A stretch of 64,000 nucleotides of DNA from Mobula birostris (GCF_030028105.1 NC_092383.1:86757921-86821920), one strand, 5' to 3'. Positions 6,617-58,661 are shown, numbered from the stretch's first letter. Notes: a model not told the origin generated them from the sequence alone. Numbers and translations: made by a program.

Positions 6617-6689
6617 AGCAAGATCACACACCACATGCTAGTAATAGCCAGACAATACTGTATATTCTCACAAGGATTATTAAGACTGC

Positions 6690-7585: not shown

Positions 7586-7906
7586 TTTCAGGTGCTTTAT
7601 GGGCAGAAGATAAAGTAAGAGGAGTTGCGGGAAGAGCGGTCACAATCGATTGTCACTATGCACCAATGTACCGTTCACACACAAAGTATTGGTGCCGCAT
7701 GTGGGATCGCCAGTGTACAGTTTTAGTGGAAACAAATGGGACACAAGGACAGAGTGGAAGACGGTCAATCACAGATAACCCAGGGCCGGGAATATTTACT
7801 GTTACTGTGGAGGATCTTCGCTCTGGAGATACAGGGTGGTACAGATGTGGAATTACAACATCTGGCAACAAACCAACATTTGTCGTACATCTACGAGTCT
7901 CTGACA
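7586..7906 (+). CDS. Gene A exon: V-type Ig domain (CD300/pIgR-like)
   Basis: ccctcag|TT TCA GGT GCT... to GAC A|gtaagt; 321 nt, phase 1-1; TIDCHY, KYWC-x6-C (second disulfide typical of CD300/pIgR/TREM), DTGWYRC. Confidence 0.93.
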
Positions 7907-10900
7907 GTAAGTTTCTCAACAATTGAATTTATGTCCCCCACTGAAATGTCTGATCTATGGAAGGGCCATGGCATCTCCGGTCTGCCAAGGCTCCACAACA
8001 GTGCAGAGACTTGTGAGGTGTGGGCAGGGGTCGAGAAACCTCACTCATGTTGTCTGACCCACTGACTGGCCAGTGATTTCCACTGGGAGGCTCAGCACAT
8101 TATTCTGTCTCAGAACTGTATGAAATGTCACCCTGTCAGAATTTTGCATTCAGACTAAAACTAATAATTCAACAGTAACAGATCGATAAGAAACAAGTGA
8201 TGATCATGGTCTAAATACCTCGAAAATTATAAAGAGTTAATCAGCCCCCAGAGAACAATAGACAGTGTTCAGTTCTTAGAGGGAAGGCCAGCCTGCTCCC
8301 CACCCCTTCCTCAGGGATGATTCAATTCCTCCCCCACCTTGCTGTCTCTTACACCATGCCCCCGCTCCCAGAAGATATTACTCCCTGTACTCAGGCTGCC
8401 TTCCTGAGAGGCCACAGTCAGAGTGGATCAATAATAGCATGTCCTCCTCACCAACAATAAACACAAGCACATCTCAAATGTGTGTGTTTGGTCCTCTGCT
8501 CTACACACGTGACTGTGTGGCTCAGTTCCGCTCAAATGCCATCTATAAATTTGCGGATGACACCACTGTTGTTGGTAGACGAGTAAGCATACAGGGGTGA
8601 GTTGGATCAGCTGGTTGAGTGGTGTGACAGCAATAATTTTGCACTTAACGTCAGCAAAATCAAGGAAATGATTGCGGACTTTCAGAATGGGAAGTCAGGG
8701 GAACACATACTGTCACATGTTCATCATAATAAATTTGATTCTAATTCAGATTCTTTGCATCCAGTTCACTTCTGGTGAGAAATATAATTGTAAACTGGCT
8801 CCCTGCAGCTGAGAGAGTTTGTAGCCCTGATTTTCACACCGACACATTTTTGTTATCATTACTGCTGTCCTGATCTGAAGACCTTCTATGTTCTGGGATA
8901 ATGGCAGACGTGGTAGATCGGGTAGCTAGGAGGATATAGAGACACTGAGAAGTAAATGAGCTGGTGAGATTCCAAAACGGTGAGCTCTGGCTGAGATACA
9001 AAAATGGTGAAATTAGAGAGTGATTGATTTTTGATGTTTACTCAGTGTCTAAATATTTGATCCTTTTCCGCAGAACCCGTATCTGTTCCGGTACTTGGAT
9101 TTCTGTCAGCTCCAAACGATTCACATCTTGCGGATTCAGCATCAATGTCATGTGAGTCTGTCCAGGGATCCCTTCCCATTCAATACTCATGGTATGAAAA
9201 GACACCATCTATGGATTCAAAGATCTCAAACACCAATGAACTGGATCTACATTGTCAACCTTTCAAACACCAACTCTATCAATATTACTGCAAAGCCACA
9301 AATATTCTTGGAACAAAATCCAGTGAAATGGTGAACATATCCATCTACAACAGAGGAGGGAAGTACAAGTATCTGATGGAATTGAGTCACGGGGGTAAGT
9401 TGTGGAGGGAGTGACTCCTTTGGGTGAACACTGTGGTGTAATTGAATGTGTGGTTTGTAATGAATGTTATATTCTTAGACTTGTATTTGTCTCCACCATG
9501 AAGTTTCCTGCTGAGAATGGAATGCCCTAACAGTCAGTAGCTGAGAAGTCCGTCCTTCACCAGAGAGCAATGTACCTCCAGCTCGCTCTAGCTGAATATG
9601 GTGGCTTTGTGTTTAAACTACTGACTGAGATTTTCTCATCTTTGAGAAGCAGTAAATAACCAAATATGCTCTTTCTAGATCTGTAAACATTTTCCTGTAG
9701 TGTATTTATTCTATAGAAAATAGGCAATCTAAAAAGCCTCTAGAAACCTCATGCAGTTAGTATAAGAACTCAAGATACTTGCAGTAGCAGGCCATTTCGT
9801 CTCTTATTTGAAGGACTGATCTATCTCAGGTTTCAACTCTTCTTCCCACAGTTCTCCATTCTTTGTCTATAAAAATGATTATCTACTTTCTCTTTAAGTA
9901 CCCCCTTTGATTCAGCATCACAACCTCCCATGTGGAGAATTCCAGAGATTGTGAACAAGTTCCTAAGCACCTCAGTTTTGAATCACCATCTCCTTGTGAT
10001 GAGAGTCCTTGATGTGGATGAATTGGACCCATATACTGGGATATCTGGAAGAAGGTTTGGATCTGAGCTCAAAACAAACACTAGACAAAATCACTTGTAG
10101 GCTTATGATTGAACACCGAACCTCATTTCAGCTGTTCCTTGAACACTCAATCCTTGGTGCCCAGAATATGATTGGCAATAACTGGGTCAGTCCTGAATCT
10201 TTAAAGGGGCCACACCACCTATCCACACTCTGGGGAGTTAGAGCTCCTAAACCTCGGAAGCTGGCACAGATGGGTGTGTTGTAATCTTAACCTTGTTAAT
10301 ATGTTACAGATCCTCTAACAAATGTAAACACTTTGGCATCTTCTCTGTGACGCCCCTAAGGATCTTCCCCAGCAACACTGGTGTTCAGTAATGCACAGGA
10401 AATATGTGTGAAGGCAATCATTTTTCACTCAAGGCATGAGTTTCCACTTGTCAATCATGTACTCCTGCTTGGGTGCATTTGGAAAACACGTGAGACTGAA
10501 TTTTCTTTCCTTGTTTCAACAGGACGTGAATATTCATGTGAAACATTTACAACAGCGTCAACTGCAAGGTAAACCACTTGATCCAGTTTTGCTGAGAGTA
10601 CAATGTTCTCATTGCTGGTGCTATGATTGACCCTTTCTAATATTATGCTGTCTCTCTGTGATCAATCATTTTGAATCTTCTCTTCTTCTTGCACACTTTA
10701 TCTACCAAATCTCTATGCCCAGCCACTCAACATCTGTTTTTTTCCTTAATGCATTAACTTGTTTTTCTTATCAGGATAAAGTGCATTTTATTGTTGTCAC
10801 TTCTTTTTGCCTTTCATAAATGCTCTAGTTAATTTATCTCACATTTGCTTCAATTTGCAAAGACTTTTATTGGCTTTTAGATGTGTTATGAAATTGTTGA

Positions 10901-13051
10901 ACTTAATTCCTCCAACCCCACATAAACACTAGTCCAGAGAGCAATGAGTTTTTTTTCTGATCACCAAAGATTATCTTTCTCAGTTCTATATTCATTTGTT
11001 ATGTGCCATGTTGTATGACATGCACGATCACGGTCTTTCCATAACCATGATTGTTCTTGGCAAATTTTTCTCCTGAAGTAGTCTGCTATTGATTTCTGCT
11101 GGGCAGTGCCTTTATAAGATGGCTGACCCAGCCATTATCAATTACGCTTCAAAAATTATCTGGCTGGTGTAAGTGGTCGCATTACCAGGACTTGTGATAT
11201 GCACCAGCTGCTCATACAACTATCCACCACCTGCACCCATGGCTCCACGTGACCCTGATTGGTGGGGGTGGTGTGGGGCGAAGCATGTTCTTTATCTGGC
11301 CCATGGTGATCTGCAGGCAAGCGGTGGGCTGGAATACTTTATAGCTGCTTTGGTAGAGACATATTTCCACCCTGGCACCCTAAGTTATCCATCTTAAGTT
11401 TTCTGAAGCAACAACCACAAAATGCTGGAGAAAATCAGCAGACCAGGCAGCTTCTATGGAAAAGAGTCAACAGTTGATGTTTTAGGGAGAGACCCTTTAT
11501 CAGGACTGGCAAGAAAGAGGAGAAGTCAGAGTAAGAAGGTGGGGAAAGAGGAGGAAAATGTACAAGGTGGTAGGTGATAGGTGTAACAGAGTGAGGGGAA
11601 GGAGGGGAAGGGTAAAGAGTTGGGAAATTGATTGATGAAAGAGATAAAGGGCTGGAGAAGGTGGAATCTGATAGGAAAGGGCAGAAGACCATGGAAGAAA
11701 TGGAAGGGGAAGGAGCACCAGTGGGAGGTAATGGATAGGTAAGGAGATAAGGTGAGAGATAGAAACAGGAATGGTGAAATGTGAAGTGGGGGAGGGCAAT
11801 ATCCAGAAGTTTGAGAAATCAATGTTCGTGCCATCAGGTTGGAAGCTACCTGTTCAGAATATAAGGTGTTGCTCCTCCAACCAGAGTGTGGCCTCATCAC
11901 AACAATAGAGGAAGGAGGCTGTGGACTGACATGTCCCAATGGGAAAGGGAAGTAGAACTGAAATGGGTGGACACTGGGAGATCCAATGTTCTCTGGGGGA
12001 CGGAGCATAGGTGCTCTGCGAAGCAGTCTTCCAATCTACGTCAGGTCTCACTGATATACATGAGGTGACACCGGGAGCACCGGACACAGTGAATGACCCC
12101 CAACAAACTCACAGGTGAAGTGTCACCTCAGCTGCTGGGACTGTTTGGGGCCCTGAATGGTAGTGAGGGCAGGGTGTAGGGGCAGGTGTGGCACTTGCTT
12201 GTGATTCTAATTTGTCTGCATGATTTCATGTCCCTTCTCCCTTTCGCCATCAGTCACACGTCATTTATTATCTTTCACATCTATCCGCATGGATTCTATC
12301 ACTGCCTTCCCTACGGCAGTGTCCGCTTCCTTCAATTGTATTTCTTTATCATTGTCGCACCTCTGCACTTCACTATTTCCTTCTCTTCCTTTCCAAAATT
12401 TATTTTCACTTTGCAATTTCTGATTTACAGTCCTCATTTTTGTGCAGTCATGTCCCAGTAATGAGGTCTGTAACTGATGATCAGAGGTTATTTTATCATT
12501 CACTCTGTCGAACACTCATTTCGCCTCCTGCTTGAACTCCCCTGGCTCAGCTGCTTTACCTCACTCCACTCCACTGAGATTACAGCAGAAACACAAAGCC
12601 ACCTCATTTCCTCGCACTGATTCTATATCTCTTCCCCTTTGCTCAGTTTCATGATATGGAAGGTGGGTCGTTGGGTGCTCTTCGCTCTCCTGATGATCAG
12701 CACGATTTCAGTCATGTGGTTCACAAGAGAAACGAAGGTAGGCTTATGGACATCAGTGAAATCGCTTTCAAATATACTGTCCATTTGAGGAAAAACATTT
12801 AAATACATGAGTCTCTTCTTATCCTATGGTAAAACCATACTTTATGCAAATGAGATGGCTCAGCTTTGACATGGTCTCTTGTGTGTAGAATGACTGATGT
12901 ATGTATGGAATGCTACTTTCAGACAGAATTCCATTGTGAGTGGCCATCTAAACTAAAGCATTGTTGAAGAATCTGATGAGTTGACCATTGCCTTTTGCAG
13001 AGACGTGATGAATCTGATCTTTTCAGCCTGATGGTCCAGGAGGTAAAGTGA
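7586..13051 (+). CDS. Gene A (5'-partial): CD300/pIgR/MDIR-like activating-type Ig receptor; exons 7586-7906 (V), 9074-9394 (C2), 10523-10568 (stalk), 12647-12737 (TM), 13001-13051 (cytoplasmic, stop)
   Basis: All five exons have AG/GT boundaries and join in frame (phases 1,1,2,0): ...SGALWAEDKVRG...VSD-K-PVSVP...LSHG-G-REYSCETFTTASTA-S-FMIWKVGRWVLFALLMISTISVMWFTRETK-RRDESDLFSLMVQEVK*. No family-type leader exon was found upstream within the window. Confidence 0.85.
9074..9394 (+). CDS. Gene A exon: C2-type Ig domain
   Basis: ttttccgcag|AA CCC GTA... to GGG G|gtaagt; 321 nt, phase 1-1; PVSVP, SCES, IQYSWY, YYCKATN motifs. Confidence 0.92.
10523..10568 (+). CDS. Gene A exon: short stalk (GREYSCETFTTASTA)
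   Basis: Polypyrimidine tract ttttctttccttgtttcaacag|; ends GCA AG|gtaaac; phase 1->2, exactly what is needed to link the C2 exon to the phase-2 TM exon. Confidence 0.75.
11415..12200 (-). mobile_element. Penelope-like element 3' part (GIY-YIG endonuclease remnant)
   Basis: The minus strand encodes a degenerate '...DEATLWLEEQHLIF..GS.QPDG.NID' GIY-YIG C-terminus followed by a CT-rich tail; shorter tail copies at ~19640-19740, ~51600-51965 and ~61840-62285. Confidence 0.7.
12647..12737 (+). CDS. Gene A exon: transmembrane segment with charged Arg (FMIWKVGRWVLFALLMISTISVMWFTRETK)
   Basis: ccctttgctcag|T TTC ATG... AAG|gtaggc; hydrophobic helix with CGT (Arg) at 12669-12671. Confidence 0.82.
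13001..13051 (+). CDS. Gene A terminal exon: short cytoplasmic tail RRDESDLFSLMVQEVK*
   Basis: ccttttgcag| phase-0 acceptor; TGA at 13049-13051; ATTAAA at 13134-13139 is a candidate poly(A) signal. An internal donor (GAG|gtaaag, 13043) cannot be excluded. Confidence 0.65.
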   Translation, partial: RRDESDLFSLMVQEVK

Positions 13052-18610: not shown

Positions 18611-18863
18611 ATGTCCACTCTCTTATTTACACAATGATCCCTCTCCACTCAGATTCTATGTAGGGTCTTGACCCAAACCTTCGACAGTTCTCTTCCCCCT
18701 GACAGACGCTGCATGGCCTGCTGAGTTCCTGTGGGAGTTTTCTCTGAATTCCAGTTTCCAGCATCTTTGGTGTCTACAAATAATCACGCACTTTTCTGGA
18801 AATGATGCATGACCCCCAAACTGAAATGGATTATGAAAATCTCCCATACCGGTTGTCACTCAC

Positions 18864-18900
18864 TGGGTAGGAAATGAATTAGAAGAATCAAAATCCACAT
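18864..18900 (-). pseudogene. Inverted orphan leader exon MWILILLIHFLP(I), paralogous to the gene B leader
   Basis: The minus strand reads aaaacaATG TGG ATT TTG ATT CTT CTA ATT CAT TTC CTA CCC A|gtgagt. It aligns codon for codon with gene B ATG TGG TCT TCG ATT ATT CTG ATT GGT TTC CTA CCT G|gtgagt, and the flanking intron sequence is also homologous. No Ig exons lie downstream of it on the - strand in this window. Confidence 0.85.
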
Positions 18901-18944
18901 TGTTTTATTTGCAGATACCAGGTCAGCACTGGTCTGTTCACAGC

Positions 18945-20830: not shown

Positions 20831-22429
20831 TTCTCCATTCTTACAAATAGCAGAACTAGTTTCCTTTCTCTCCTCTTTTCAGAATTACTCTTTATTGTCA
20901 GTTTTATATGCAGTTGATGCCTTTCATTACAATACCATGGAGGTATGGATATGATATTGAGTGATATTTGTTGTGCTTTCTGACATACGGGTAAAATTGG
21001 CCTGTAGGTATCTGCAAAAACAGAACCCATTCATTACTCAGGGATAGTCCGTATGGAGATTGATTAAGATTGATCTGATTAGTTGATAGGTGAAGCCCAG
21101 CCCACCAGTGAATACATCGGCAAAGGAATCCTGGCACAAGAAAGCAGAATCCATCATCAAGGACCCCCACCATCCAGACATGCTCTCTTCTTGGTGCTGC
21201 CAATGGAAAGGAGGTACAGGAGCCTCAGATCCCACACTACCAGGTTCAGCAACAATTCAGCCATCAGGCTCCTTAACCAGCATGGATTAATTCCTCTCAC
21301 TTCAACCCTGAAATGATCACTGAACACAACCTCTGAACTCACCTTCAAGGAATCTATAATTCATGTTCTCAGTTTTATATATTTATTTATTTATTGTATT
21401 TTCAGTTTGTCTTCCTTTACAGATTGTTTCTTTGTCCATATCTCTGTGTTAATCTTCATTGAATCTGTTGTATTTCTTTGTCCCACTGCGAACGCCAGCA
21501 AGGAAATGACTTTCTGGGTGGCATATGCTGACGTAATTGTATTTTGATAATAAATTTACCACGTACTTTTGGAACTTTGACAAGGTGCATGATTGCTGAC
21601 CTTTCAGAACACATTTTGTAGAAATGGAGTGAGAAAGAGACACAAGAATGAAAATTTCCAATCACTGTACAAAGGTCTTAAAGGAGAATGAGCAATGGAA
21701 ATACAAGTTGTGTGCTGAATAAAATGAGTGAGAGCTGCAAATTACTGCAGCTTGCTTTGGTCATCAGGGCATGAGTCTGCAAAGAGAAGGTATGACTTTT
21801 CTCAGTACTGATCTGTGACTGTAACCCATGAAAGTTCAATAAAGCATCTTATAAATGAGAGAAGGTGAACTGCATTATTGTTGTTATAATCAGTGTTGTC
21901 TATGGTGACAAATGCACTTTGCTGGTAGACGTAATTTGAATGTTGGACTTTGAAATGCACCATTCACAATTTGGGAATATCACATTATATCCTTCACCAG
22001 CTGTGTGAGGATGTGAAGCAGTAACACCAGAGTCTGTTTGGAGGTCTTGATCTCTTCAGGTCAGGTTTATCTGATGGGTGTTGATTAGCTGCAGATAATT
22101 CCGGATGCAGTGGTCCCACTTGTGAATTTGGGCCTGTTAAACCTGAGCTTGTTAAAGGTCTGAGGGAAGGAACTTGCTTTGTGTTTTTTCTACTGCAAAT
22201 CAACACGTTTCACATCAGAAGGCAGTGTAAATAAATCTGATTCAGATTTTGAAAACGACCCTTTCTCTGAACCAGATACCCTAAAGCAATTCTCAAAGGA
22301 CATGGTTCAAAATTCTGTGGCTCTTTACTTGACTTACAAAACAGAATTTAGGGAAGTTCCAATGGATGCCTGACGAAAACAAATTGTTCTATCATCTTCC
22401 TGCATTGCTCCATCATTTAAGACCAAAAG

Positions 22430-28267: not shown

Positions 28268-28307
28268 ATGATGTGGTCTTCGATTATTCTGATTGGTTTC
28301 CTACCTG
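28268..28307 (+). CDS. Gene B leader exon MMWSSIILIGFLP(V)
   Basis: gtaaaATGATG... CCT G|gtgagt (strong donor, phase 1); completes the signal peptide with VSGA from the V exon. Confidence 0.88.
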
Positions 28308-40300: not shown

Positions 40301-43300
40301 ACCCAAAGATGTTGTGCCGCATCTGGGAACGCCGATGCACATCGTTAGTGAATACAAAGGGGCAAAATGAGCAGTATGGAAGAATGACAATCAGAGATAA
40401 CACATCCCAGGGAATATTTACTGTTACTATGGAGAATCTTGTCTCGAATGATACAGGGCATTACAGATGTGTAATTACATCATCTGGCAATCCTCCAATG
40501 TTTGACGTGTATCTACAAGTATCTGATGGTAGGTTTCCCATTGATTGACTTCATCTTTCCACTGAAGTGTCTGATTCATGTTTTCTCTGGGAAGTGTCAG
40601 GGCAGTACCGATATTCCGCGGTCTGTTACAGTGCAGCCCCGTGTGGGGAGGGTGCCGGGTTCGGGAAACCCCACTCAAGTTGCTTTCATCCAGTGTGTGG
40701 GATCTGACCCTCTGGTTTCCAGTGGGAGGCTCAGCACATTATCCTGCTTCTGAACCGTATGAAATGTTACTCTGTCAGTGGTTTGCATTCAGACTAAAAC
40801 TAATAATCTGATATTTACAGGTCAATGAGAAACAAGTGATACACATGATCTAAACACTTCAGAAAGCATAAAAAGGGAATCAGATCCAGATCACAACAGA
40901 TTGTGTTCAGTTCTCCCAGGGCAGTCTATTCTGTTTCCCATCCCTGCTTCGTGGATCAGTCACTCCCTTGCCTACCCTGCGCTCCCTCTCTGTGCTCTCG
41001 TAATCCACCCGCCAGCACCCACTGACCATCCACTTCCCAGCATCCAGCCTCTCCATTGTTGTGTTCTTTATACGTACCGTGGGTTACTAAGAACAAACCA
41101 CATTCTGGAAGAATAAGAACTAGAACTTTTATTTACAACAGCAAACAGCAACCCTGTTTCTTCTTACAGTCATGCTTTCTAGATCATTCTCTCATTTCTG
41201 CGCATGTTCCAAACTCTGTCCAATCACGTTCTTACTTGTGACATGTGATATCACCACATCCTCCTTTCCTTTAAAAGAAAAACAACTAGCAACATTAATC
41301 AGAACAAATACATAATTTAACATGTCTCTATCAGTCTCCCTGAGGGTTTATGAACACGAGTAGACCTTCTAAGTGATTCACACAGTTCTTGTGTTTCGTT
41401 GTTATCTTCTTGTTTTGTCTGGTCTGCATCAGTTAACTGAAACTCTGAAGTTGGTTCTTTCTTAAGGTGTTTGAGAAGAAATCGCAATTCCTTCATTAAC
41501 TTTGTAATCTCTTTTTTATGCGGGCTTCATCATTTCAATAAAACTTCTCAATTCCTTCGCTTGTACTTTCACTTCTTCAATTGGATCCTGATTCTTGTCA
41601 CTCTTTGGCTTAAGACCAGTCTTGTACTGTACTGGCAAGTTTGCTGGTGGCATGCTTTGTCAGATGCTGGTAACAAAGGGATGGGCCTGGGAGCTATCGT
41701 TATGACTTCTTTTACTTTTGCCGCGTTGGAATAAAATTCTGTTCTCTCTTGCTCTTTCATCATTTCAGTGTATTCTGACTGTGTGTCACTGTCCAGGACT
41801 AAAATCTATTTTCACCAAATTCAGTCTCTCACAGGCAGATAGACCCAGTATTGACTGTACATTTTTTGGCACCACCACAAATGAAAGCATGTGCACCATA
41901 TTTTTGTGTGATACTTTTGCCACACATGTTCCTTTAACTGGAATGTCTGCATCTGAATACCCAATCACTTTTATATTTGTCTGATGTAATTTTGGTATAG
42001 GCTTTAATGCATTAAACTCAGATTCTGCAAGAACATTTACTTGTGCTCCAGTATCCAGTTTAAACAGAATATTGTTTTGATTCACTTGCAATGGAATAGT
42101 CCAGTCATTCTTACTTTGTTTGTTTTTACAAAGCACATCTATGTAAAACTCCTCACGTTCATTTTCAAGCACTGCATTCGCATGTTTTATTTCTTTTTTT
42201 ATTTCTACAACAGCGTGAAAAATTATTATTCTTACTGTAGTCGTTGCACATTTTCCCGTATGTTGGACACTGTTTTAGCCGATGTTGCTGACCACAGCGA
42301 TCACAAAGTCTTTTTCTTTCAGATGTCTGTTGGTTTCGTTGTCGCTTCATTATTTTTCCTAATATGTTTGTGCTTTACAGTGTGTACACTGCCATTCTCG
42401 ATAAAAAGCTCTTTAGCCTGCGACACCACAGTTTGCGAAGCTTTGCAGAGAATCAAAGCTTTTTCCGAATCTATGTCTGGTTCTCTTAATAGTCTTTCTC
42501 GCAGACCATTATCTAGGATGCCGCAATCAATTCTGTCTTTAATGAGAGAATCCGTCAGCTCTGCAAACTCGCATGTTTTACTGCAGTTTCCCAACTCTGT
42601 AACAGATTGATCAATCGTTTGACCAGGTCTCTGCCAAGATTTGAATAAATTGTACCGTTCATACGTCACATTGTGCTTCGGTATACAAAATGCATCAAAT
42701 TTATCCATTATCGCTTTGGAATTCAAATTATCTCCATTCTCAAAAGTAAAATAGTTATATACCTCAATTGCATCATCACCCTATTACATGGAGTAGAATT
42801 GCTGCTCTAGTTTTTTCTGATTTTTTTATCAGCTCCGATTGCCAATAAATAAATTTCAAAATGCTGTTTAAATATTTTCCAGTTTTCAGCTATGTTTCCT
42901 GTCAGCTGAAGTGTCGATGGGGTTGCAAAACTTCCATTTTTAAAACTGTTAGCAAACCAAACAGTTCGCGTGCTTTTTTTTTCTTCGATTATCTTTGATT
43001 CTCCCGTTTCCGTGTTATTCTTCCAGGCCCACTTCTGACAGCATGTTGTGTTCTTTATACGTACTGTGGGTTACTAAGAACAAACCTTATTCTGGAAGAA
43101 TAAGAACTAGAACTTTTATTTACAACAGCAAACAGCAACCACATTTATTACAGCCATGCTTTCTAGATCATTCTCTCATTTCTGCGCATTCTCCAAACTC
43201 TGTCCAATCACGTTCTTACACGTGACATGTGGTATCACCACACCCATCAGGCCCATTCCTGGTGGGAAATAGACCAACGAGGTTAGAAAGAACTTGGGAT

Positions 43301-46300: not shown

Positions 46301-49300
46301 TATACTCCGTCCCTAAAGTCACCATTCATTTTGTATATATCTGACAATTTCCTGCTTTCACATTATGAGGGTTTTCCAGGACACACACAAATGCTGCCAT
46401 TGCAAAGTCAAACTGTTAGGTGCCACTTTAGACTGTCTCCTTGTGTCTGAGAGAGATTGAAACTGATTTTCACACTGACATGTACTCAGTGTCATCACTG
46501 CTGTTCTGATCTGGAGACCTGCTGTGTTCAGGGTTAATGTCAGACATGGCAGTTCAGGAAGATGTGAGGATGCAGAGACACAGAGAGGAAGGTGATCTGC
46601 TCAGTTTGCAAACTGGTACAGAATTGCTGAAATCTTTAGAGTGTTTGATTTTCAGAAGTTCACTGATTCTTTTCCACAGAACCCATGTCTGTTCCTTTGC
46701 TTCGATTTTCACCATCAACAAATGGCTCAAGTTGTGGGGACTCCGTGTCAGTGTCCTGTGAGTCTGTCCATGGATCCCTTCCCATTCAGTACTCATGGTA
46801 CGAAAAGACCCCATCTGTGGATTCAAAGATCTCTGACACAAATAAACTGGATCTACATTGTCAATCCATAAAATACAAAAATCATCTATATTATTGCAAA
46901 GCCTCAAATGTTAATGGAACGACGTCCAGTGAAATGGTCAACGTATCCATCTCCAACAGTGTCAGGACCTGCAGAAATGTGATTGAAGTCAACAGCATGA
47001 GTAAGTAGTGCAGGATTTGATTCTTTATGATAGTCGATGGAGTACAACTGAACAACTGTGGCGTGCTGGATTTTGTGTTGTTGGATCTTCACTCAGGAGC
47101 ATGGGGTGCATGCTGTCACCACTTTTCAGAGAATCAACAGCCTTTTGGCACAGCAGTTCAAACCTCTGTCTCTCACCAGAGTGTCTCCTGCTTCGGATCT
47201 GCTCTCGGTGGCTGGGTGTGAATGTGGTAATTTTTTCGGCCATTCATTAAGATAGTCCTTCCAAGATAAACTACTGCAAGATGCAAAGTAATTCTATTAT
47301 CAAAGTACATATATGTCACCATATTCTACCCCGAGATCCATTTTCCTGCAAACATTCACAGTAGAAACAAATACATAAAACAGAAACAATGAAAAACATA
47401 CAATCCAAGATGGACAAACAACCAATGTGCAAAAGACACATACAGATACAAAAGGATCAAATTATTAATACGTAAATAAATAATTAATGTTGAGAGCATT
47501 AGTTGGTAAGTCCTTGGAAGTGAGCAGTTCAGTGTTGAAGTGAGTGAAGGTATCCATGCTAGTTCAGGAGCCTCATGGTTGAAGGGTAATAACTGTTTCT
47601 GACCCTGCTGGTGTGACACCTCCTTCCCAATGACAGCAGCGTGAGGAGAGCATGGCCTGGGTGGTAGCAGTCCTTGATGATGGATGCTGCTTTCTCGTGA
47701 CAGAGCTCCTTGGAGACTTTATCCATATTTGCTCTGCCTGAATTTATAAACAATTATCTGTGCTGTACTTTATAGAAAATGAGCTGAGTCATAAAATCAA
47801 AGCAGTTGTATCTTTATAAAATACGTAAAAATCACATGTATTGTGAAAGTCCATGTCCTGAAAACCAACATATCTTTCTCTAATAGATGGAATTGAGAGA
47901 TGTGACCTCAAAAAACTGTGTATCCTAGTTCACTGAGTCTCCAAGCAAAAGTGTAGATAGACTGAACTCAAATGAATCCTATAATGAGTAGCCTCAAGAA
48001 ACATTATTGAAGAGGTAAGGGTTATATTGGAATCATTCAACCACTCAACCAATGGGGACTTGGATAAATTATATTGGGCCTTACTATTTCCCCAATTCAG
48101 CTAATCAGAAATACTTAGGAAAAAATTAGTATTGCTTAGACTGGGGCAATAACAATAATGTAGATAATTTCCTAAATGGTAATAGAATAGAAAGGGGGTC
48201 AAATATAATGAGTTTTGAATATCTTTGTACATCTTTCAGTGAAGGTAAACCATGCAGATGCAGCAGGGCATAAGGAATGCAAATTGTATTTGGACTTTCA
48301 GAGAGATTTGAGTAAAGGAACAAGCATGAAACACTGCAATGATACAGGGATTTTATCAGTTAGGACCAAAGTTCAAATACATTTATTATTGAAGTATGTA
48401 TACCATATACAACTTTCTGATTTGTCTCCTTGCAGGCAGCCACATAACAAAGAAACCTAATAGAACTGCAGAAAAAAAAAGATACCATTCAAACAATGAT
48501 AGTAAGCAAATAGCATTCAGGAGTGAAATTCATGCAAGTGAGTCCACAGCCATGAAGCCAGTCACAACCCGTCTCGGAGCCTGTTAGTTGCAGGCCACAG
48601 CCTCAGTTCAGTGCTGAGATGAGTAAATCTTGCAGAGCATTTAGCCTCACTTCAACCAGTCCCTCTCATCCAGCCCTGACACCCTGACCTTTTCAATCTG
48701 GCCTGGTGCTTAAATCAGTCACATATTGACTTGTTCCTCGCTGTCGGGCCACCAGCATTGTCAGCAGATTTGATCCAATGAACGATGTTCTTGTTATGGA
48801 AGGCAGAGAGCAAAGGATCAGCAGACTGATTTCTGGAATGTCACAAGTGACAAAAGATCAGAGATATGATTGATAAGGTTTTTATTTGCTGGAGTTTAGA
48901 AGGCTGGGAGGTGATCTCATAGAAACCTGCAATATTTTAGCAGGGTGATACACAAGCAGGTAGGTTGCTTCCAGTGCCAGGGAATACAGGACAGTGCATG
49001 GAATCTGAGAATAATCTAAGGGTGAGCTACGAGGGGTGATTGATAAGTTCGTGGCCTAAGGTAGAAGGAGTCAATTTTAGAAAACCTAGCACATTTGTTT
49101 TTCAACATAGTCCCCTCTTACATTTACACACTTAGTCCAGCGGTCGTGGAGCATATGGATCTTGGACCTCCAGAAAGTGTCCACAGCAGGGATGATTTTT
49201 ATGTTCGTGGCCTATGGTAGGTGGAGATGAGTAACACAGCTCTAGTTTCATGCACATGCAGTTCAACTCTTTGAGTGATTATGTACAAAGTTTGAAGTTA

Positions 49301-52300: not shown

Positions 52301-55300
52301 GGAGAACAGCAATAAGCATAACACCATTACAACACCAGCGATCAGTGACCGGGGCCCAATTCCCACCACTGTTGCAAGTTGTTTGTGCATTCTCCCAGTG
52401 ACTGTGTGGGTTTCCTCTGCGTGCTCTGATTTCCTCTCACGTTCCAAAGGCACACGGGCAAGTATTAGTAATTCATAGGCAAGCCATTTTGGTGCTGGAA
52501 GCATGGAACACTTGCAGGCTTCCCTCAGAAAATATTCTGTGTTGGTTGTCATTGCTAACGATGCATTTCACTGTGTGATCTGATGAACATGTGACAAATA
52601 AATCTCATCTTTAATCTTTAAATGTGTATTGAGTAACAGATCACCTTTGGTCCACCATGCTCAAGTACCCATTGGTCCAACAATTGTGCTGTCTTGTTTT
52701 TGCAAGTACAAAGCAGATAAAATGTCATTTGATTTTCCTTTAACAGGGCCAATCGATTTCTGTGAAAATACTGTGACAGAATCTACGACAACTACACAAG
52801 GGGAAGAATCTAAATCAGATAAAATGTAAAGTATAAGTTTCTCTCTACGGCTGGTTTCACTGCTACTCCTTCCAAATACAGCCAGTTGGGAGAGAAATCT
52901 GTTTCTCTTTAACTGGTATTAAAAACATTTGACATGATTAACTTCAATGAAATGATGTGCCGGAAACTGATTTTCTTGTACAGGCGTCAAGCCCGTGATC
53001 AAAGATAATCTTCTTACCCTAAATATTCTGAGTAATGAAGTGATTGGTATATATTAGAACAACAGGCCCTTCAGCCTGACTCGTCCAAGCCAAACAAGAG
53101 TCCAGGCAGCCACGAAACAAAGAAAACCATGGAAACTGTTCAAAGAAGAGGTTCAGCTACATAGTCAGCAACGCTGTCTGTCAGAGAAGAAGCCACCAAT
53201 CAATCCTTTTAATGTAACAGTTCCAATGAAATGTTTGTAAAGGAACATGGTAGGGATCCCAAATGGCCTGGACAATAGTTACTCTTTAACCAACATCACT
53301 ATCATTGGTCATGGTCACATTTCTACTTGTGAGACCTTGCTGTGAGCAGATTGGCTGCTGCAATTTCCCACGTTGTCAACAGTGTCTAATGTTCATTTTC
53401 TGATCTGCAGACATCCTGAGCTCATGAAAAATGCGGTGTAAATGTCAGACTTTACAAATGGCCAAGAATAAGTTTCAAACCAGGACTGACACTTTCCTAT
53501 TCTTTACCACAGGCCCACTTACATAATTGTGCTCAGTGTCATTGGAATTCTTCTCATACTACTTGTCATTTGTCTACTTTGCTACCTGAAGAGAAAAAGC
53601 AAGGGTAGGTTTCTTTTTTCCTTTAATTATTTCATGATGAATATGATAGCTAGCTGCTGAATCTGAAGGAACTTGATCTGGCTGCAGTGAACAAAAAACC
53701 AGGTTTAGAGTGCTGATGTGTTGGTTTACAACACATGAATGAATGGTGTTGCTTCCACTGTAACCTGGTGACTCCATTATTCCTGAAACATCAGCCGATG
53801 GAATCTCACATCAATTGTGGAATGGCAGAGAACTAAGAGGCTGGGTTGAAGAAAGATTTAGGTGGTCTCACTGTTGTACTCAGTTTTGGAGAATTAGCTG
53901 TTGTATTTGAAGATGTATTCAATAAGCTGTTCCTCAGTACAACTTCCAAATTAAAAGCAATCATTTCGACAATGTATGTGTAAAATCATTCTCTCATGTT
54001 ATTCTCAAAAAAAAAAGATCAGGTGTATCTTTCACCTATCTACCACTCACTATATATCACTGGACAAAGTACCCTGCTCTCATTGGTTGCTGCAGATTAA
54101 ATCACGGGTCTGCTTTGCTGAGATGATCCTGAGATGGGCACCATGGTAGCGTAGAGGTTAGCGCCACACTGTTACTCCTCGGGGCTTTTTGGAGATCGGA
54201 GTTCAATTCCGATGTTGTTTCGTAAGGAGTCTCTGTGTCCAGCCCATTGAATGTGTCCCTGGGTACTCCAGTTTCCTCCCACTCTCCAAAGAGAGTTATC
54301 TGGTCATTGTAAATTGTTCCATGATTTGATTTTTAATCAGGCTTGTCGGGGTCACTGGGTCAGCGAGGCACAAAGGGCCAGAAGGGCTTACTCTGTGATG
54401 TATAAATAAATAAATAAGTAATCTTGTGTCCTTTAAGTAGACTTTGTAAACCAGTGAAGAGAACTGTGAGTACAGAGATCATCTCTGTGTTATTATCAGA
54501 TGGGGAAATGGAGTTGAACACTGGAAAATAAAGCCCCTGCAGCCTCCAACTCACTGGCTGAAAATTAAGACAACTAATATTTCAACTGCTCCCCGTGATT
54601 TAGTTCCTGGCCTCTCTCTCTCTCTCCCCCCAACAAACCAGACAATTACTTTCAGCGTAGTATTATTCCCTAGCCAGTGTTTATTGCAAAGATCTGAACA
54701 AAAGGAATGCATTCTTTTCCAAAGAGAAATTCCCTAAATATTCCCTGAGATATAGGCAGAAAAGTGCTAGGAATGCTCAGCATGTCAGATGGCAGCTGTG
54801 GAGAGAGGAACAGCTGATCCTTCAAGGCAATGGTCTTGCATCAGAACTGGAATATGTGAGCAATAACAAGTCTTGAGATGCAGAGCAAGTACAGAAGGAA
54901 GCACAAAAGAGAGGGTTTCTGAGGGAGTACAAGACAGAATAAGTTCATAAGGAAAGATGATGTGTGAGACAAAAGGTGGGTAGTAATAGGATAAATGAAG
55001 ATTTAATGATGGGCAGGCTTTGAGATTTGATTTCTGCATCGGTGACATTATCCTCATCAGTAACAGAATGTACTGCTCTTGATTTCCTTTGAAATTTCTC
55101 TTTATATGGTTAACTACCATTAATTAAAAAATGGGAAGCAGGATTTGGGAAATAAAATCTGTTCACAATTCAACTTGCACTATTCTGCCCTCACTCAAGG
55201 GTTTTCCCTATTTTTTAGACTAGACAGATAGATAAACTCCAGTCCAGGTGTAGTTGTAGTCTGAAGGTGGTTTTATTGATCACCAATGCATTGCAGTGCA

Positions 55301-58300
55301 CAAGGAGCTGAGTAAAAAGACAATGCTTCTAGCTGTTCTCACAAGAGATGGATTCAAATGTTGATTAAAATTCCTTTGACTCATCACAAGTTGTTTCTGA
55401 TAAATGAACGAATGAGTACACAAGTGATTATAAAATGGCCAACCTAATGTCAAAGTTCAATTGCTTAGAAACACAGTAGTAAGGAATGAAAAACTGCTGT
55501 AAACTTACAAGTAAGCAGTGATATCTAGTGGCTAGAAATAAAATAGCAAACTATATCAGGAAGGAACATGACATTCACTAATAGTCTAAGGCCATCAAAG
55601 TCATTCATTGAGGATGGGACATTCGGTTTCCATATGAAATTGTTTATCTCGGTGTTGAATTTGAAAGGATTTATGGTCAGTTGGTAAATGAGATGATTTT
55701 TATTTTGGGCAGTTTGTTCCTCCTGCCTGAGGGACAATCTACCACAGAGTCCTGGGGAGATCAGTGAGATGTTCATGGGACAGTGTGAATATTGTCAGGT
55801 AATCTGCTCCATCATATTGTGAAGGAGAAATATTCTCTAAGCACACACACACAGACAATGAAGAAAATGTAGGTAAATCAGACAGGATTTGTAGCAATAA
55901 AAAGAAAGATAAAATTTCAAATCCAAAACCTTTATCATAATGTTCAAAGATGATAAACGTTAGTTTTCAGTAGCAGAGAAGGTGAGGTAAAAAACAATAT
56001 GATCCTTTCTAAATATTATGCAGTAACCAGAGCAGAGGTTTGCTCTGTGTGGAGAATCATTACTGTGTTGCAGCTGGGGTTCCCGTGGTTCTGAGATTCA
56101 GTATGGGTGTCATGGTAACCTAGCGATTCACGTGAAGCTATTACAGCTCAGGGCGTTCTGGAGTTTGCAGTTCAATTCCAGTGCCGTTCTGAAAGGAGCC
56201 TCTGTATGTCCTCCCTGTGGAATGCATGGATACACTCCGGGTCCTCCAGTGTCCTCCCACAGTCCAAAGACGTACCAGGTAGGTGAATTGGTCGATGGAA
56301 TTGTCCCATGATTAGGTTACGGTTAATCTGGTTTGTCAGGGGTTGCTGGGGTGGCAAAGCTCAAAGGACTGCAAGGGCCGACTCTGTGCAGTATCACTAA
56401 ATAAGTAAATAAATGTTTATGTCCGTAACAAACACTGAATTTTTAGCAGTAATGTTGTATTTTCCAGAATCGAAGCACAACACATCTCACGGAGAAGGCA
56501 ACAATGGAACCCAGGTACAGACATGAAGTATAAATTATCTGAATGCTTCAGAATGTTTAGAAATTGGATTACATGGGAGTTTACAGGTCATTAATCCCCA
56601 CTAGTCCAGTCTAGTATTTATATTAGACACAAACCTCCGAACCCCACCTCATTGATTTCCATTGGCCTATCTTTCGGGTTATTTGTCTCTTTCTGTTCTG
56701 CTCATCCAGCTTTTCCTAAAGTGCGTCTATAATATTTTACCTGACTGTTCATCGAAGTGGCTCCAGTCTTTATTATCATTACTGAATGGTGAAGAGTGAG
56801 ATTGTTCCTTTCTCTACTGTTAGAGATGGAGCATCTAATTGTGTAAATCTGTCTTTGGGTTCAATGGCTTTTCAGTTTACATTTTGTATATTCCCTCTGA
56901 GAGTCTCAAACTCAATGTGAAATCAGAAAAAATGGGTCAGATCAATTAAGAATAACAATTTTAGAGATGACACAGTAGCTTAGTGGTTAGTGTAACACTA
57001 AACAGCGCCAGTACCTTGAGTTCATTTCCACTCCTCTCTGTAAGGAGGTTTTATGTTCTCTCCGTGACCGTGTGGGTTTCCTCTGGGTGCTCTGCTTTCC
57101 TCCCACATTCCAAAGAGGTTAGTATGTTAATTTGGTCACATGGGTTTAATTGGGTAGAACGGGTTTGTTGGGCCAGAATGGCGTGTTACCAAGCTGTATC
57201 TTTAAATAAGTAAATATCTGTCCTGTGCTGACCTCACCCACCCACTTTCTCACTCTACCACTCAATCCTGACACCAGTATGAATATTCTATTGACCCTTA
57301 GGTCTGTTATCAACAATCTTTGTTCATGATATTTTCCACAGTTTTCAGCTTGCTTGTTATTATTACCTTCAATAATTAATGTTCTAATTGATTTAATTTT
57401 TCCAAATTGAATAATTAAGGTCAATATCATCAAAGAGCTTTCTCAATTTCACAATTTCATCAGTTGCTTTTCACTTTTCCAAAGATAACTAACTGCAGAG
57501 TGGAGATTGCTGAAGGATTCTGCTCTGCCGTACATTTTCTCTTCTTTGCATCACGTTCTCTCCAAGAGCTGTACCCTCAGAGAACTGTTTGTTCCTCTTG
57601 GGCATCCTCCAGTCTTGGAATCCCACTACCAAAGTCGGTAGCTTCAGTTGCCCAAATCCCACACACTAGACTTAACCCCATAAACTCCTGCAATTCTGTC
57701 CTCTTAACTTTTGTTCATTAGAGATACAGCAGAGTAACCGGTCCTTCCGACCCACGAGCCACCTAATTACACCCATGTGATCAATTCACCTCCTACAACA
57801 AACCATTTAGACTGTAAACCCTAAAAATATTGTAATTTGCCCAAATAATTCTCAAGTTCATTTTGAAACTGTTCTCTTGCTAAACTCTGTGAAACACCTT
57901 GGACCAGCTTAGCATGTTGGTGTTGTAAAGCAACATGCTGTTGTTGCCCAGTTAGTAGTGGGTCCTGACTGAGGATCACAGTCATTGAGTCATAAGCTGT
58001 TATCAACCACTCTGGAAAATTAAATTCTAGAAGTTGAGGGTTTATTTAAAGCATCAGGGTTTATTTAAAGAGAGGAAACTGAAGGTGATCTAGTAGATGT
58101 GCTCAAGACTATCCAATTGTTTTACAGGATAGTGAAGGTGTTTCCACTTACAGATCAGAAAAGAACTCGAGCTATGAACATAGGATAGTTATTTTTAAAA
58201 ATTGGAGGAACTTAAAACCGTAAGATCATATGGTATAGGAGCAGAATTAGGCCTTTTGGCCCATCAAGACTGCTCCACCCTTCAATCATGACTGATTTAT

Positions 58301-58661
58301 TTTCCTTCCACCCTATTTTCCTGCCTTCTCCCAGTAACCTTTCACACCCTCACCTTTCACATTCAACAGACATAAAATAGATCTTGGAATTTATTTATCA
58401 TTTCAGGAACTGGTCATGATGGAAGAAAACATCGTTTATGCAGATCTACACCATGTTCGAAGCAATGAGGCAGCTGCCCAGTTGGCTAACAGTGAAAATG
58501 GAAATGTGTATGCCAACGTGAAATTTAAAAGAAAATCAAGAGCAGTGCACTCCTTTACTGATGAGGACAGTGTCACCTACGCAGATATCAAATTTCAGAG
58601 CCAACCCGCAAAGCCCAAACGGAAAACTTCCTCTCCTCGTACTCCACAGGACTTGGAATAA
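28268..58661 (+). CDS. Gene B: CD300/pIgR/MDIR-like inhibitory Ig receptor, L-V-C2-V-C2-stalk-TM-cyt, 598 aa; exons 28268-28307, 30481-30801, 30921-31241, 40208-40528, 46680-47000, 52747-52825, 53513-53604, 56468-56514, 58407-58661
   Basis: The exons sum to 1797 nt (599 codons including stop) with no internal stop and canonical GT/AG at all 8 introns. No leader, TM or terminal exon was found between 31241 and 40208, which argues for one 4-domain gene rather than two genes. Confidence 0.8.
29320..30060. repeat. Unclassified interspersed repeat in gene B intron 1
   Basis: Begins with the caataggtacatttaatgtcagagaaatg head and has low-complexity interior; no convincing ORF; family not identifiable by eye. 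Confidence 0.35.
30195..30335 (-). mobile_element. Old DeuSINE/SacSINE-like fragment ~150 nt upstream of the V1 acceptor
   Basis: ctccctcagtactacactgg...ctctggagtgggaagtgaacccacaa resembles the reverse complement of the tRNA-like head of this SINE family (recalled, not aligned). Confidence 0.45.
30481..30801 (+). CDS. Gene B exon V1
   Basis: ccctcag|TTTCAGGT... GAA G|gtaggt; 321 nt; TIDCHY, KYWCHGWTHQC, DTGWYSC. Confidence 0.93.
30921..31241 (+). CDS. Gene B exon C2a
   Basis: cttcccacag|AA CCT GTT... ATC A|gtaagt; 321 nt; only a 119-nt intron separates it from V1; SCES, QYSWY, YYCSALN. Confidence 0.92.
31600..36180 (+). mobile_element. Old CR1 fragment (~31600-31940 and ~35582-36180) interrupted by a younger CR1
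   Basis: RT text '...YLKVHD' before 31940 resumes as '...GEILP..LEFFEEIT' after 35582. Confidence 0.65.
31940..35581 (+). mobile_element. Near-full-length CR1: ORF1 esterase (SGNH) part plus ORF2 endonuclease-RT, disrupted
   Basis: ORF 31972..32523 (GDSI, HIGTND, DGLHL: SGNH hydrolase typical of CR1 ORF1); APE motifs VNARSI, GITETWL, MGDFN; RT pieces 33476..35379; (ttctatgt)n tail. Confidence 0.93.
37583..38372 (+). mobile_element. tRNA-derived SINE split by a CR1 3' fragment (37657-38138) with a ctgagg target-site duplication
   Basis: A/B-box head gtggccaagtggttaagg...gagttcgagcccc; ctgagg at 37651-37656 and 38139-38144; the SINE body resumes with caacgtgttgtgtccttgagcaaggc. Confidence 0.75.
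38375..39525 (+). mobile_element. CR1 3' half (different subfamily)
   Basis: ORFs 38381..38689 and 38693..39466 (FADDTK, HLEYCVQFW, FFTQRVV). Confidence 0.9.
40208..40528 (+). CDS. Gene B exon V2
   Basis: ccctcag|TTTCAGGT... GAT G|gtaggt; 321 nt, open; TIDCHY, KMLC-x6-C, DTGHYRC. Confidence 0.9.
41057..43242 (-). mobile_element. Internally deleted Gypsy LTR element (gag + CCHC knuckle + protease; RT/RNase H and most of integrase missing)
   Basis: LTRs 41057-41258 and 43044-43242 (TG...CA; ~90% alike by eye); PBS tgctgtcagaagtggg (tRNA-Leu-like) inside the 5' LTR; PPT ttaaaggaaaggagga; flanks tccat/cccat; gag ORF 42319..42726; LDTGA protease in ORF 41786..42172. Confidence 0.9.
44714..46035 (-). 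mobile_element. CR1 3' half, minus strand (adjacent CR1 fragments at ~43330-43760 and ~44060-44710)
   Basis: ORF 45021..45926 (LDFQKAFD, GVPQG, FADDTK). Confidence 0.9.
46680..47000 (+). CDS. Gene B exon C2b
   Basis: ttttccacag|AA CCC ATG... ATG A|gtaagt; 321 nt; SCES, QYSWYEK, YYCKASN. Confidence 0.92.
49030..49632. mobile_element. Palindromic mariner-type MITE inserted at TA inside a CR1 remnant
   Basis: TA|cgaggggtgattgataagtt ... aacttatcaatcatccctca|TA; ~280-bp arms are reverse complements; flanks rejoin as the CR1 text aagggtgagcTAtttaagactgag. Confidence 0.85.
49760..50955 (+). mobile_element. RTE-clade LINE 3' part
   Basis: GVRQGCVLAP, LQYADD, LQWLGHVIRM, C-terminal CPTCNRAC...H zinc motif; (gaa)n tail. 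Confidence 0.88.
52747..52825 (+). CDS. Gene B stalk exon, Thr-rich (RPIDFCENTVTESTTTTQGEESKSDK)
   Basis: gattttcctttaacag|GG... AAA AT|gtaaag; phase 1->2, the same phase pattern as the gene A stalk; shares a C-E-x-x-T-T pattern with it. Confidence 0.78.
53513..53604 (+). CDS. Gene B TM exon, uncharged (MPTYIIVLSVIGILLILLVICLLCYLKRKSK)
   Basis: ttctttaccacag|G CCC... AAG G|gtaggt; strongly hydrophobic helix followed by a basic stop-transfer segment KRKSK. Confidence 0.88.
56468..56514 (+). CDS. Gene B cytoplasmic exon 1 (ESKHNTSHGEGNNGTQ)
   Basis: gtattttccag|AA... CAG|gtacag; phase 1->0 bridges the TM exon to the terminal exon; the donor is only moderately strong. Confidence 0.6.
58407..58661 (+). 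CDS. Gene B terminal exon with ITIM/ITIM-like motifs IVYADL, NVYANV, VTYADI
   Basis: ttatcatttcag|GAA CTG GTC ATG...; TAA at 58659-58661; matches ORF 58416..58661. Confidence 0.88.
   Translation, partial: ELVMMEENIVYADLHHVRSNEAAAQLANSENGNVYANVKFKRKSRAVHSFTDEDSVTYADIKFQSQPAKPKRKTSSPRTPQDLE

What the first reader, a model, noticed from the sequence alone, without database searches (positions are those of the whole stretch)
7586..58661. Hidden tandem paired activating/inhibitory Ig-receptor locus (CD300/pIgR/MDIR-like) in an elasmobranch
Seen: two collinear genes share homologous V and C2 ectodomain exons but have opposite signalling ends. Gene A has an Arg-containing TM and a 16-aa tail without Tyr; gene B has a neutral TM and three Tyr motifs. 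Both models are phase-consistent and stop-free although introns are packed with TEs. Known: paired receptors (CD300, LILR, KIR, PIR) have this layout, and skate MDIRs (Cannon et al. 2006, recalled) were described from cDNA as modular activating/inhibitory CD300/pIgR-like receptors. Inference: this is a genomic paired-receptor module of the cartilaginous-fish innate or NK-like system, whose V-C2 repeat architecture and exon structure may be poorly annotated.
Basis: partly seen in the sequence, partly recalled or inferred. Interest (0 to 1): 0.8.

Follow-up and report, generated by a model that had tools for sequence, protein, structure and literature searches.

The report
Manta ray MDIR activating/inhibitory receptor genes
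This stretch of giant manta ray DNA holds the back half of an "on-switch" immune receptor gene and a whole neighbouring "off-switch" gene of the MDIR family, known from skates since 2006, so the reading is right but the find is an ordinary new member of a known family.

Summary
All splice sites are AG/GT and there are no stops.

The window is Mobula birostris. The 275-aa set is not a whole gene. It matches residues 227-502 of RefSeq XP_072134923 exactly. That protein is a four-Ig (V-C2-V-C2) receptor with an invariant Arg in the membrane span, and its leader, V1 and C2 lie about 9 kb upstream of the window.

The 598-aa gene is also V-C2-V-C2, with an uncharged membrane span and two ITIMs plus a YxN motif. 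RNA contigs confirm the V-b to C2-b and C2-b to V-c junctions, and they hold the ITIM exon. A 597-aa stingray protein is 81% identical end to end.

Both genes are clear MDIR family members: 64% identity to skate MDIR5 and 54% to MDIR3. The V domains are of the CD300/pIgR type and the C2 domains of the FCRL type.

The locus is not hidden, because RefSeq annotates it, though under mixed names and with merged models. It is not a strict pair either, since the two ectodomains are only 65% identical. An earlier follow-up on an overlapping window of this genome (s1-145212) reached the same conclusion.

The parts
7586..7906 (+). Gene A exon: V-set Ig domain, the third Ig domain (D3) of the four-Ig activating-type receptor
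   Evidence: Pfam V-set 3.7e-12. Translates exactly to P0020/P0092 residues from 227 on. Falls with D3-type V domains in the tree.
9074..9394 (+). Gene A exon: C2-type Ig domain (D4). It lacks the membrane-proximal Cys that C2-b and C2-c have.
   Evidence: tblastn and exact match to P0020. Long branch on the D4 side of the C2 tree.
10523..10568 (+). Gene A stalk exon (GREYSCETFTTASTA), phase 1 to 2
   Evidence: 100% match to P0020 residues 441-455. AG/GT splice sites.
12647..12737 (+). Gene A transmembrane exon with Lys and an invariant Arg (FMIWKVGRWVLFALLMISTISVMWFTRETK)
   Evidence: The GRW motif is conserved in skate MDIR5, stingray, electric ray and manta paralogues.
13001..13051 (+). Gene A last exon of isoform X2: 16 aa without Tyr, plus the stop
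   Evidence: Exact match to the P0020 C-terminus.
21083..21316 (+). Alternative last exon of gene A (isoforms X1, X3, X4): 77 aa derived from the C-terminal end of a LINE ORF2
   Evidence: 100% match to P0092/P0042/P0091. Homologous TE copies at 14987-15076(-) and 47288-47711(-).
28268..28307 (+). Gene B leader exon (MMWSSIILIGFLP), phase-1 donor
   Evidence: tblastn to leaders of homologues. The next RefSeq gene's coding range starts at this ATG by coordinate arithmetic. No RNA contig covered it, so its use is unconfirmed.
30481..30801 (+). Gene B V-b exon (D1-type V domain, CD300/pIgR-like, with the extra Cys pair)
   Evidence: Pfam. PDB: CD300f 7.6e-18 and pIgR. RNA contigs with 0 mismatches and a spliced joint to 30921 in 4 runs. 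D1 clade in the tree.
30921..31241 (+). Gene B C2-b exon (D2-type C2 domain, FCRL5-like)
   Evidence: PDB FCRL5 1.2e-31. D2 clade, support 99. RNA joints on both sides.
40208..40528 (+). Gene B V-c exon (D3-type V domain; YRCV replaces the usual YRCG)
   Evidence: An RNA contig runs from 31241 straight into the 34 nt that match only 40208 exactly in the window. D3 clade, support 96.
46680..47000 (+). Gene B C2-c exon (D4-type C2 domain)
   Evidence: D4 clade, support 98. 93.5% identical to the M. hypostoma counterpart.
52747..52825 (+). Gene B stalk exon (PIDFCENTVTESTTTTQGEESKSDK), phase 1 to 2
   Evidence: tblastn. The same junctions appear in M. hypostoma P0237 and H. akajei P0023.
53513..53604 (+). 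Gene B transmembrane exon, no charged residue (YIIVLSVIGILLILLVICLLCYL)
   Evidence: Hydropathy scan 3.55; tblastn.
56468..56514 (+). Gene B cytoplasmic exon 1 (ESKHNTSHGEGNNGTQ)
58407..58661 (+). Gene B cytoplasmic exon 2 with ITIM IVYADL, YxN motif YANV, ITIM VTYADI, and the stop
   Evidence: RNA runs X1-X4 hold 86-100% of its sampled 31-mers.
18751..18907 (-). Inverted relic copy of a leader exon plus the start of its intron (73% to 28264-28420); the leader-like peptide runs on to 18948
   Evidence: blastn; tblastn to leaders.
55016..55098 (-). Inverted 83-bp fragment of the ITIM exon (84% identical), interrupted by a stop; a relic inside a gene B intron

Best explanation
The region is part of the Mobula birostris cluster of modular domain immune-type receptor (MDIR) genes. 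It holds two tandem + strand genes of the same leader-V-C2-V-C2-stalk-TM design. Gene A has only its D3, D4, stalk, TM and tail exons in the window; its 5' half lies about 9 kb upstream. It ends in a membrane span with an invariant Arg and a short Tyr-free tail, or alternatively in a tail made from an exonised LINE fragment. By analogy with other receptors of this design, gene A would signal by pairing with an ITAM-bearing adaptor chain. Gene B (598 aa, 28268-58661) has an uncharged membrane span and a tail of about 110 aa with two canonical ITIMs and a YxN motif. By the same analogy, its phosphorylated tail would recruit SH2 phosphatases and damp signalling. The V domains are of the CD300/pIgR/NKp44/TREM type, with the extra Cys pair, and the C2 domains are closest to FCRL5. 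Shown here: the exon models, family membership, domain types, two splice junctions of gene B, and transcription of its ITIM exon. Inferred: adaptor pairing, phosphatase recruitment, the ligand, the cell type, and use of gene B's own leader.
For: Exon models are open with AG/GT sites. Gene A exons equal RefSeq P0020 residues 227-502 exactly, and isoforms P0092, P0042 and P0091 map to the same exons. Gene A is 63.7% identical to skate MDIR5 over 493 aa, including the stalk, the WKVGRW membrane span and the tail. Gene B is 54% identical to skate MDIR3 over 586 aa, including the tail. Gene B is collinear with the 597-aa H. akajei P0023 (81%) and with residues 441-1025 of M. hypostoma P0237 (85%), with identical junctions. 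RNA contigs from four runs are absent from most intron sequence, match V-b and C2-b with 0-1 mismatches, and show the joints 30801>30921 and 31241>40208. The ITIM exon is held at 0.86-1.00 by the same runs. PDB matches: CD300f 7.6e-18, pIgR D1-D5, NKp44 and TREM2 for V; FCRL5 1.2e-31 for C2. Domains group by position (D1, D2, D3, D4) across manta, stingray, sawfish and skate.
Against: No RNA contig covered gene B's leader exon. The RefSeq gene that starts at its ATG has a 1535-aa product that I could not retrieve. The M. hypostoma model joins gene A's four Ig exons to gene B's, so gene B may not be an independent unit. Gene A transcripts were not examined with reads here. The A and B ectodomains are only 65% identical, so a shared ligand is not implied. 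No functional data exist.
Confidence: 0.8

Rival explanations
1. A and B form one complex transcription unit. Transcripts starting at gene A's promoter either stop at the Arg-TM exons, giving a four-Ig activating form, or skip them and leader B and splice C2-a (9394) to V-b (30481), giving an eight-Ig inhibitory form. On this reading gene B is a block of alternative 3' exons rather than a separate gene.
For: The M. hypostoma RefSeq model P0237 (1025 aa) has exactly this structure: its first 440 aa are 98% identical to gene A and the rest is 85% identical to gene B. Its coding span of 64.5 kb matches the A-start to B-stop distance here, about 67.7 kb. All Ig exons are phase 1-1, so the join is in frame. 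No RNA coverage of leader B was seen although V-b depth reaches about 1000.
Against: M. birostris RefSeq places a gene start at leader B's ATG. H. akajei has a stand-alone 597-aa counterpart with its own leader. Gene prediction in tandem arrays often merges neighbours, as the 1254-2193-aa models in other species show. An empty stretch in contig coverage proves nothing, as the tool itself notes.
Confidence: 0.15
2. Gene B is two products. One is a short leader-V-b-C2-b form that reads through the 31241 donor and ends near the AATAAA at 31381, secreted or lipid-anchored. The downstream V-c/C2-c/TM/ITIM exons would be used only by other transcripts, or would be relics.
For: Other rays have annotated 248-292-aa L-V-C2 forms with short read-through tails (P0003, P0004, P0005, P0011). 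There is low contig depth just past the donor (31297-31459, depth about 14) and an AATAAA at 31381.
Against: The contigs past the donor carry 4-6 mismatches in about 130 nt, so they probably come from a paralogue. Depth falls more than tenfold at the donor, and the spliced 31241>40208 form is the main one, with depth 285 in X1. The ITIM exon is transcribed. V-c and C2-c are intact and 84-94% conserved in M. hypostoma. A short isoform could still coexist with the long one.
Confidence: 0.05

Closest known systems
Skate MDIRs (modular domain immune-type receptors; Cannon et al. 2006, Immunogenetics 58:362, PMID 16738934, cited in PMC3031540)
   Same: Full-length collinear homology: gene A to MDIR5 at 63.7%, gene B to MDIR3 at 54%. 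Both have alternating V and C2 ectodomains in variable number. The family includes forms with a basic TM residue and forms with ITIM tails, and it is a large multigene family.
   Different: The species and lineage differ (myliobatiform ray against skate). Here the genomic exon structure and gene order are seen, not cDNAs. MDIR3 has an extra N-terminal V domain (V-V-C2-V-C2).
CD300 / CMRF35-like molecules (CLM)
   Same: The V domain matches CD300f at E 7.6e-18 and also matches CD300a. The extra Cys pair (YWC...QC) is present. The family also has activating members with a charged TM and inhibitory members with ITIMs.
   Different: CD300 proteins have a single V domain and no C2 domains. Orthology was not tested.
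Polymeric immunoglobulin receptor (pIgR)
   Same: The V domain aligns to all five pIgR domains, best to D1 (47 bits), including the second disulfide. RefSeq names these genes 'pIgR-like'.
   Different: pIgR has V-type domains only and a sorting/transcytosis tail. It has no C2 domains, no ITIMs and no charged TM.
FCRL5 and classical paired receptors (KIR, LILR, PIR)
   Same: The C2 domains are closest to FCRL5 (1.2e-31). The activating/inhibitory split follows the same logic, with an Arg near the outer end of the membrane span as in LILRA, PIR-A and FcαRI (from general knowledge).
   Different: FCRLs lack V domains. Classical pairs have nearly identical ectodomains, whereas A and B are 65% identical.

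Membership tests
MDIR | Full-length sequence homology to the skate MDIR cDNA products | tested here: met
   Gene A (P0020) against MDIR5 (P0029): 63.7% over 493 aa. Gene B model against MDIR3 (P0261): 54.4% over 586 aa. Gene B against MDIR2 (P0065): 44% over 396 aa. MDIR2, 3 and 5 were recovered as database hits.
MDIR | Modular ectodomain built from distinct Ig domain subfamilies in variable number | tested here: met
   V-C2-V-C2 architecture with four position-specific domain types. RefSeq isoforms drop single Ig exons.
MDIR | Members with a positively charged TM residue and members with cytoplasmic ITIMs | tested here: met
   Gene A has KVGRW in its TM. Gene B has IVYADL and VTYADI. This is by sequence only; signalling was not assayed.
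MDIR | Large multigene family / cluster | tested here: met
   At least ten distinct M. birostris family proteins were recovered. Neighbouring family genes lie on both strands.
MDIR | Expression in immune or haematopoietic tissue | tested here: inconclusive
   Transcribed in four RNA runs, but the tissues are coded and unknown.
CD300 (CMRF35-like) | One IgV domain with two disulfides, then a stalk and TM | tested here: not met
   The V fold and the extra Cys pair are present, but the architecture is V-C2-V-C2.
pIgR | Tandem V-type domains only, with a transcytosis tail and no ITIM or charged TM | tested here: not met
   C2 domains alternate with V domains. The tails are ITIM-bearing or short behind an Arg-TM.
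FCRL | Ectodomain built only from FcR-type C2/I-set domains | tested here: not met
   The C2 domains resemble FCRL5, but half of the domains are CD300/pIgR-type V domains.
Classical paired receptors (strict sense) | Near-identical ectodomains joined to opposite signalling ends | tested here: not met
   A against B: 64.7% over 456 aa. P0094/P0093 elsewhere in the cluster reach 91%.

The most novel reading that the evidence does not exclude
The tandem MDIR units are not closed genes. Because every Ig exon is phase 1-1, transcripts can run across unit borders. One promoter (gene A's) could then yield either a four-Ig activating receptor or an eight-Ig inhibitory receptor that carries the same four outer domains. 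The on/off choice would be made by alternative splicing and termination rather than by separate genes.
Probability: 0.12. Interest if true: 0.6.

Novelty: new member of a known kind. Interest (0 to 1): 0.28.

Why it matters
The locus gives exon-level structure for two manta ray members of a poorly studied cartilaginous-fish receptor family; my full-text searches for MDIR terms turned up only one relevant paper. It shows that the four-domain V-C2-V-C2 unit, the Arg-bearing membrane span and the ITIM tail are conserved from skates to mantas. It also shows that current RefSeq models in this cluster are inconsistently named, merged or frame-shifted, which is useful for curators. It does not change what is known about paired immune receptors.

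Tried and rejected
Those junctions, and all of gene A's, therefore have no direct read evidence here.

2. I tried to fetch the 1535-aa RefSeq product that starts at 28268. It was not among the 90 hits of the P0002 search (length limit 618 aa), nor the top 150 representatives for V-b, nor the hits of the 1254-aa P0095 search. Look-ups of neighbouring genes returned no DNA and no neighbours.

3. P0020 and P0042 are not indexed as gene products, because only the longest isoform is.

4. The primary MDIR paper (PMC3701310) and a 2010 review (PMC2823954) are not held. The family description therefore rests on PMC3031540, on the database names and on my recollection.

5. Rfam found nothing in 28000-31000. 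The very deep RNA signal at 29320-29670 is an interspersed repeat, not part of the gene.

6. I looked for a second Arg-TM or ITIM-tail exon set and for minus-strand Ig exons. None were found beyond the two small inverted relics.

7. I rejected the pseudogene reading for gene B, because the frame is intact, it is conserved in two other rays, and it is transcribed.

Full report
**What is in the sequence**

A tblastn search of the window's own Ig-like ORFs against the window finds three V-type exons (near 7.6, 30.5 and 40.2 kb). It also finds three C2-type exons (near 9.1, 30.9 and 46.7 kb). All are on the + strand, with mutual E-values of 1e-33 to 1e-43. Pfam calls the first set V-set (E 1e-8 to 4e-12) and the second set Ig_3/Ig_2/Ig_C17orf99.

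A database search with the C2-b ORF returned ray proteins named pIgR-like, CMRF35-like or Fc receptor-like. Using these as templates located the small exons:
- a leader at 28268;
- stalk exons at 10523 and 52747;
- an Arg/Lys transmembrane exon at 12647 followed by a 16-aa last exon at 13001;
- an uncharged transmembrane exon at 53513;
- two cytoplasmic exons at 56468 and 58407.

Joining the exons at AG/GT sites gives an open 598-aa protein from nine exons, ending at the stop at 58659-58661. It also gives an open 275-aa piece from five exons starting at 7586.

The 598-aa protein reads leader, V, C2, V, C2, stalk, TM (YIIVLSVIGILLILLVICLLCYL) and a tail with IVYADL, NVYANV and VTYADI. The first and third motifs fit the ITIM consensus and the second is a YxN motif. 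The 275-aa piece ends in FMIWKVGRWVLFALLMISTISVMWF-TRETK-RRDESDLFSLMVQEVK.

The introns carry LINE reverse transcriptase and endonuclease ORFs and an LTR-type protease ORF. All Ig exons are phase 1-1, so phase consistency alone is weak evidence. The open frames and the homology are what count.

**Species, and what "gene A" really is**

The 275-aa piece equals residues 227-502 of P0020 without a single difference. P0020 is XP_072134923, annotated as Mobula birostris pIgR-like isoform X2. The window is therefore giant manta ray.

P0020 and its isoforms (P0092, 563 aa; P0042; P0091) begin with a leader, a V and a C2 that are not in the window. The gene's coding range is 30.4 kb, which puts its start about 9.1 kb before the window. 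So V-a and C2-a are domains 3 and 4 of a four-Ig receptor.

Isoforms X1, X3 and X4 replace the 16-aa tail with a 77-aa exon at 21083-21316. That exon is derived from the C-terminal part of a LINE ORF2. X3 and X4 also skip single Ig exons.

**Gene B**

No RefSeq protein of 194-618 aa matches gene B exactly. By coordinate arithmetic, the gene annotated next after gene A starts at 28268, which is the ATG of leader B. Its listed product is 1535 aa. I could not retrieve that protein. It is probably a model merged with downstream units, as happens in other species (1254-2193-aa models).

Support for the 598-aa structure comes from three sources.

1. *Homologous models.* The 597-aa H. akajei protein P0023 is 81% identical from residue 2 to the stop. 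Residues 441-1025 of M. hypostoma P0237 are 85% identical, without gaps, through every junction.
2. *RNA contigs.* Four RNA runs of the organism leave most intron sequence uncovered. They match V-b and C2-b with 0-1 mismatches. They show the joint 30801>30921 in all four runs. One contig runs from 31241 into 34 nt that match only the V-c exon start at 40208 exactly.
3. *The ITIM exon.* The same runs hold 86-100% of the sampled words of this exon.

Some points remain unconfirmed. No contig covered the leader exon.

**Family**

The searches recovered skate MDIR5, MDIR2 and MDIR3 by name. Gene A is 63.7% identical to MDIR5 over 493 aa, including the stalk (EYSCE), the WKVGRW membrane span and the KRDES tail. 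Gene B is 54% identical to MDIR3 over 586 aa, including the ITIM tail.

The Arg of the GRW motif is invariant in skate, stingray, electric ray and manta sequences, while the neighbouring Lys varies.

Against solved structures, the V domain is closest to CD300f (7.6e-18), CD300a, all five pIgR domains, NKp44, TREM2 and FcμR. It keeps the second Cys pair, which aligns with that of pIgR D1. The C2 domain is closest to FCRL5 (1.2e-31). This mix explains the inconsistent RefSeq names.

[quoted passage not shown] 2006).

**Domain trees**

V and C2 domains from manta, devil ray, stingray, sawfish and skate group by position rather than by gene. V-b falls with D1 domains. V-c falls with D3 domains (support 96), with V-a next to that clade. 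C2-b falls with D2 domains (99) and C2-c with D4 domains (98).

The four-domain unit is therefore old. This supports reading V-b/C2-b/V-c/C2-c as one gene.

**How "paired" they are**

Gene A and gene B ectodomains are 64.7% identical. Another activating/inhibitory couple in the same cluster, P0094 and P0093, is 91% identical up to the stalk. The window thus holds neighbours of opposite signalling type, not a tight pair.

**Mechanism**

From what is established for KIR, LILR, PIR, CD300 and related receptors, I infer the following; none of it is shown here.

- Gene A probably reaches the surface and signals through an ITAM adaptor held by the membrane Arg. An Arg near the outer end of the span is the FcRγ-type arrangement.
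- Gene B's ITIMs, once phosphorylated, probably recruit SHP-1, SHP-2 or SHIP. The YANV motif could bind Grb2.

The ligand and the cell type are unknown.

**Rival worth keeping**

The M. hypostoma model P0237 joins the orthologue of gene A's four Ig domains (98% identical) straight to gene B's V-b and runs on to the ITIM tail. Its span of 64.5 kb is comparable to the 67.7 kb measured here.

If that model reflects real transcripts, one unit could give both an activating four-Ig form and an inhibitory eight-Ig form. I rate this about 0.12-0.15. Merged models are common in these arrays, a separate start is annotated at leader B in M. birostris, and the stingray has a stand-alone 597-aa gene.

**Verdict**

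It overstates on "hidden" and "paired", and it takes half a gene for a whole one.

This is a new member of a known kind and is already in RefSeq under other names. An earlier follow-up of this scan on an overlapping window (s1-145212) reached the same conclusion independently.

Noticed in passing
window 28305-28389 joined to 29715: Low-depth RNA contigs (runs X1, X2) show a spliced joint with CT..AC ends. The exon edge at 28305 abuts an AC at 28303-28304. This points to a minus-strand (antisense) spliced transcript that overlaps the donor of gene B's leader exon.
   Followed up: partly
window 18751-18948 (-): An orphan inverted leader-like exon (…SANKTMWILILLIHFLP) plus the start of its intron, 73% identical to the leader B region. 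No minus-strand Ig exons lie near it.
   Followed up: partly
window 55016-55098 (-): An 83-bp inverted fragment of the ITIM exon (84% identical), with a stop, sits inside the intron between gene B's TM exon and cyt1.
   Followed up: partly
window 21083-21316 (+): Three of four RefSeq isoforms of gene A end in a 77-aa tail taken from a LINE ORF2 C-terminal fragment (…RRYRSLRSHTTRFSNNSAIRLLN…). This is an exonised transposon that replaces the normal 16-aa tail.
   Followed up: yes
gene B against M. hypostoma P0237 residues 441-1025: Identity rises steeply along the protein: V-b 70%, C2-b 83%, V-c 84%, C2-c 93.5%, tail 94%. Gene A's four domains are 98% identical between the two Mobula species. 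The outermost V of the inhibitory gene is either evolving fast or was exchanged. The M. hypostoma V-c counterpart also has Trp in place of the first canonical Cys.
   Followed up: partly
RefSeq P0001 (XP_072133758, M. birostris), a paralogue outside the window: This model begins with a V exon read in the wrong frame (MDGVDECQSQITRNREYLLLLWRIF…, the same as frame 1 of the V-b exon here). It then joins two C2 domains directly. It is probably a mis-prediction.
   Followed up: no
window 29320-29670: RNA contig depth is very high (2,500-11,600) with many divergent loose ends. This is an abundantly transcribed interspersed repeat in the leader-to-V-b intron. Rfam found nothing.
   Followed up: partly
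window 40208-40528 (V-c): The conserved YxCG motif reads YRCV in M. birostris and YICV in M. hypostoma. The Gly-to-Val change in the F strand is shared by both Mobula species.
   Followed up: no
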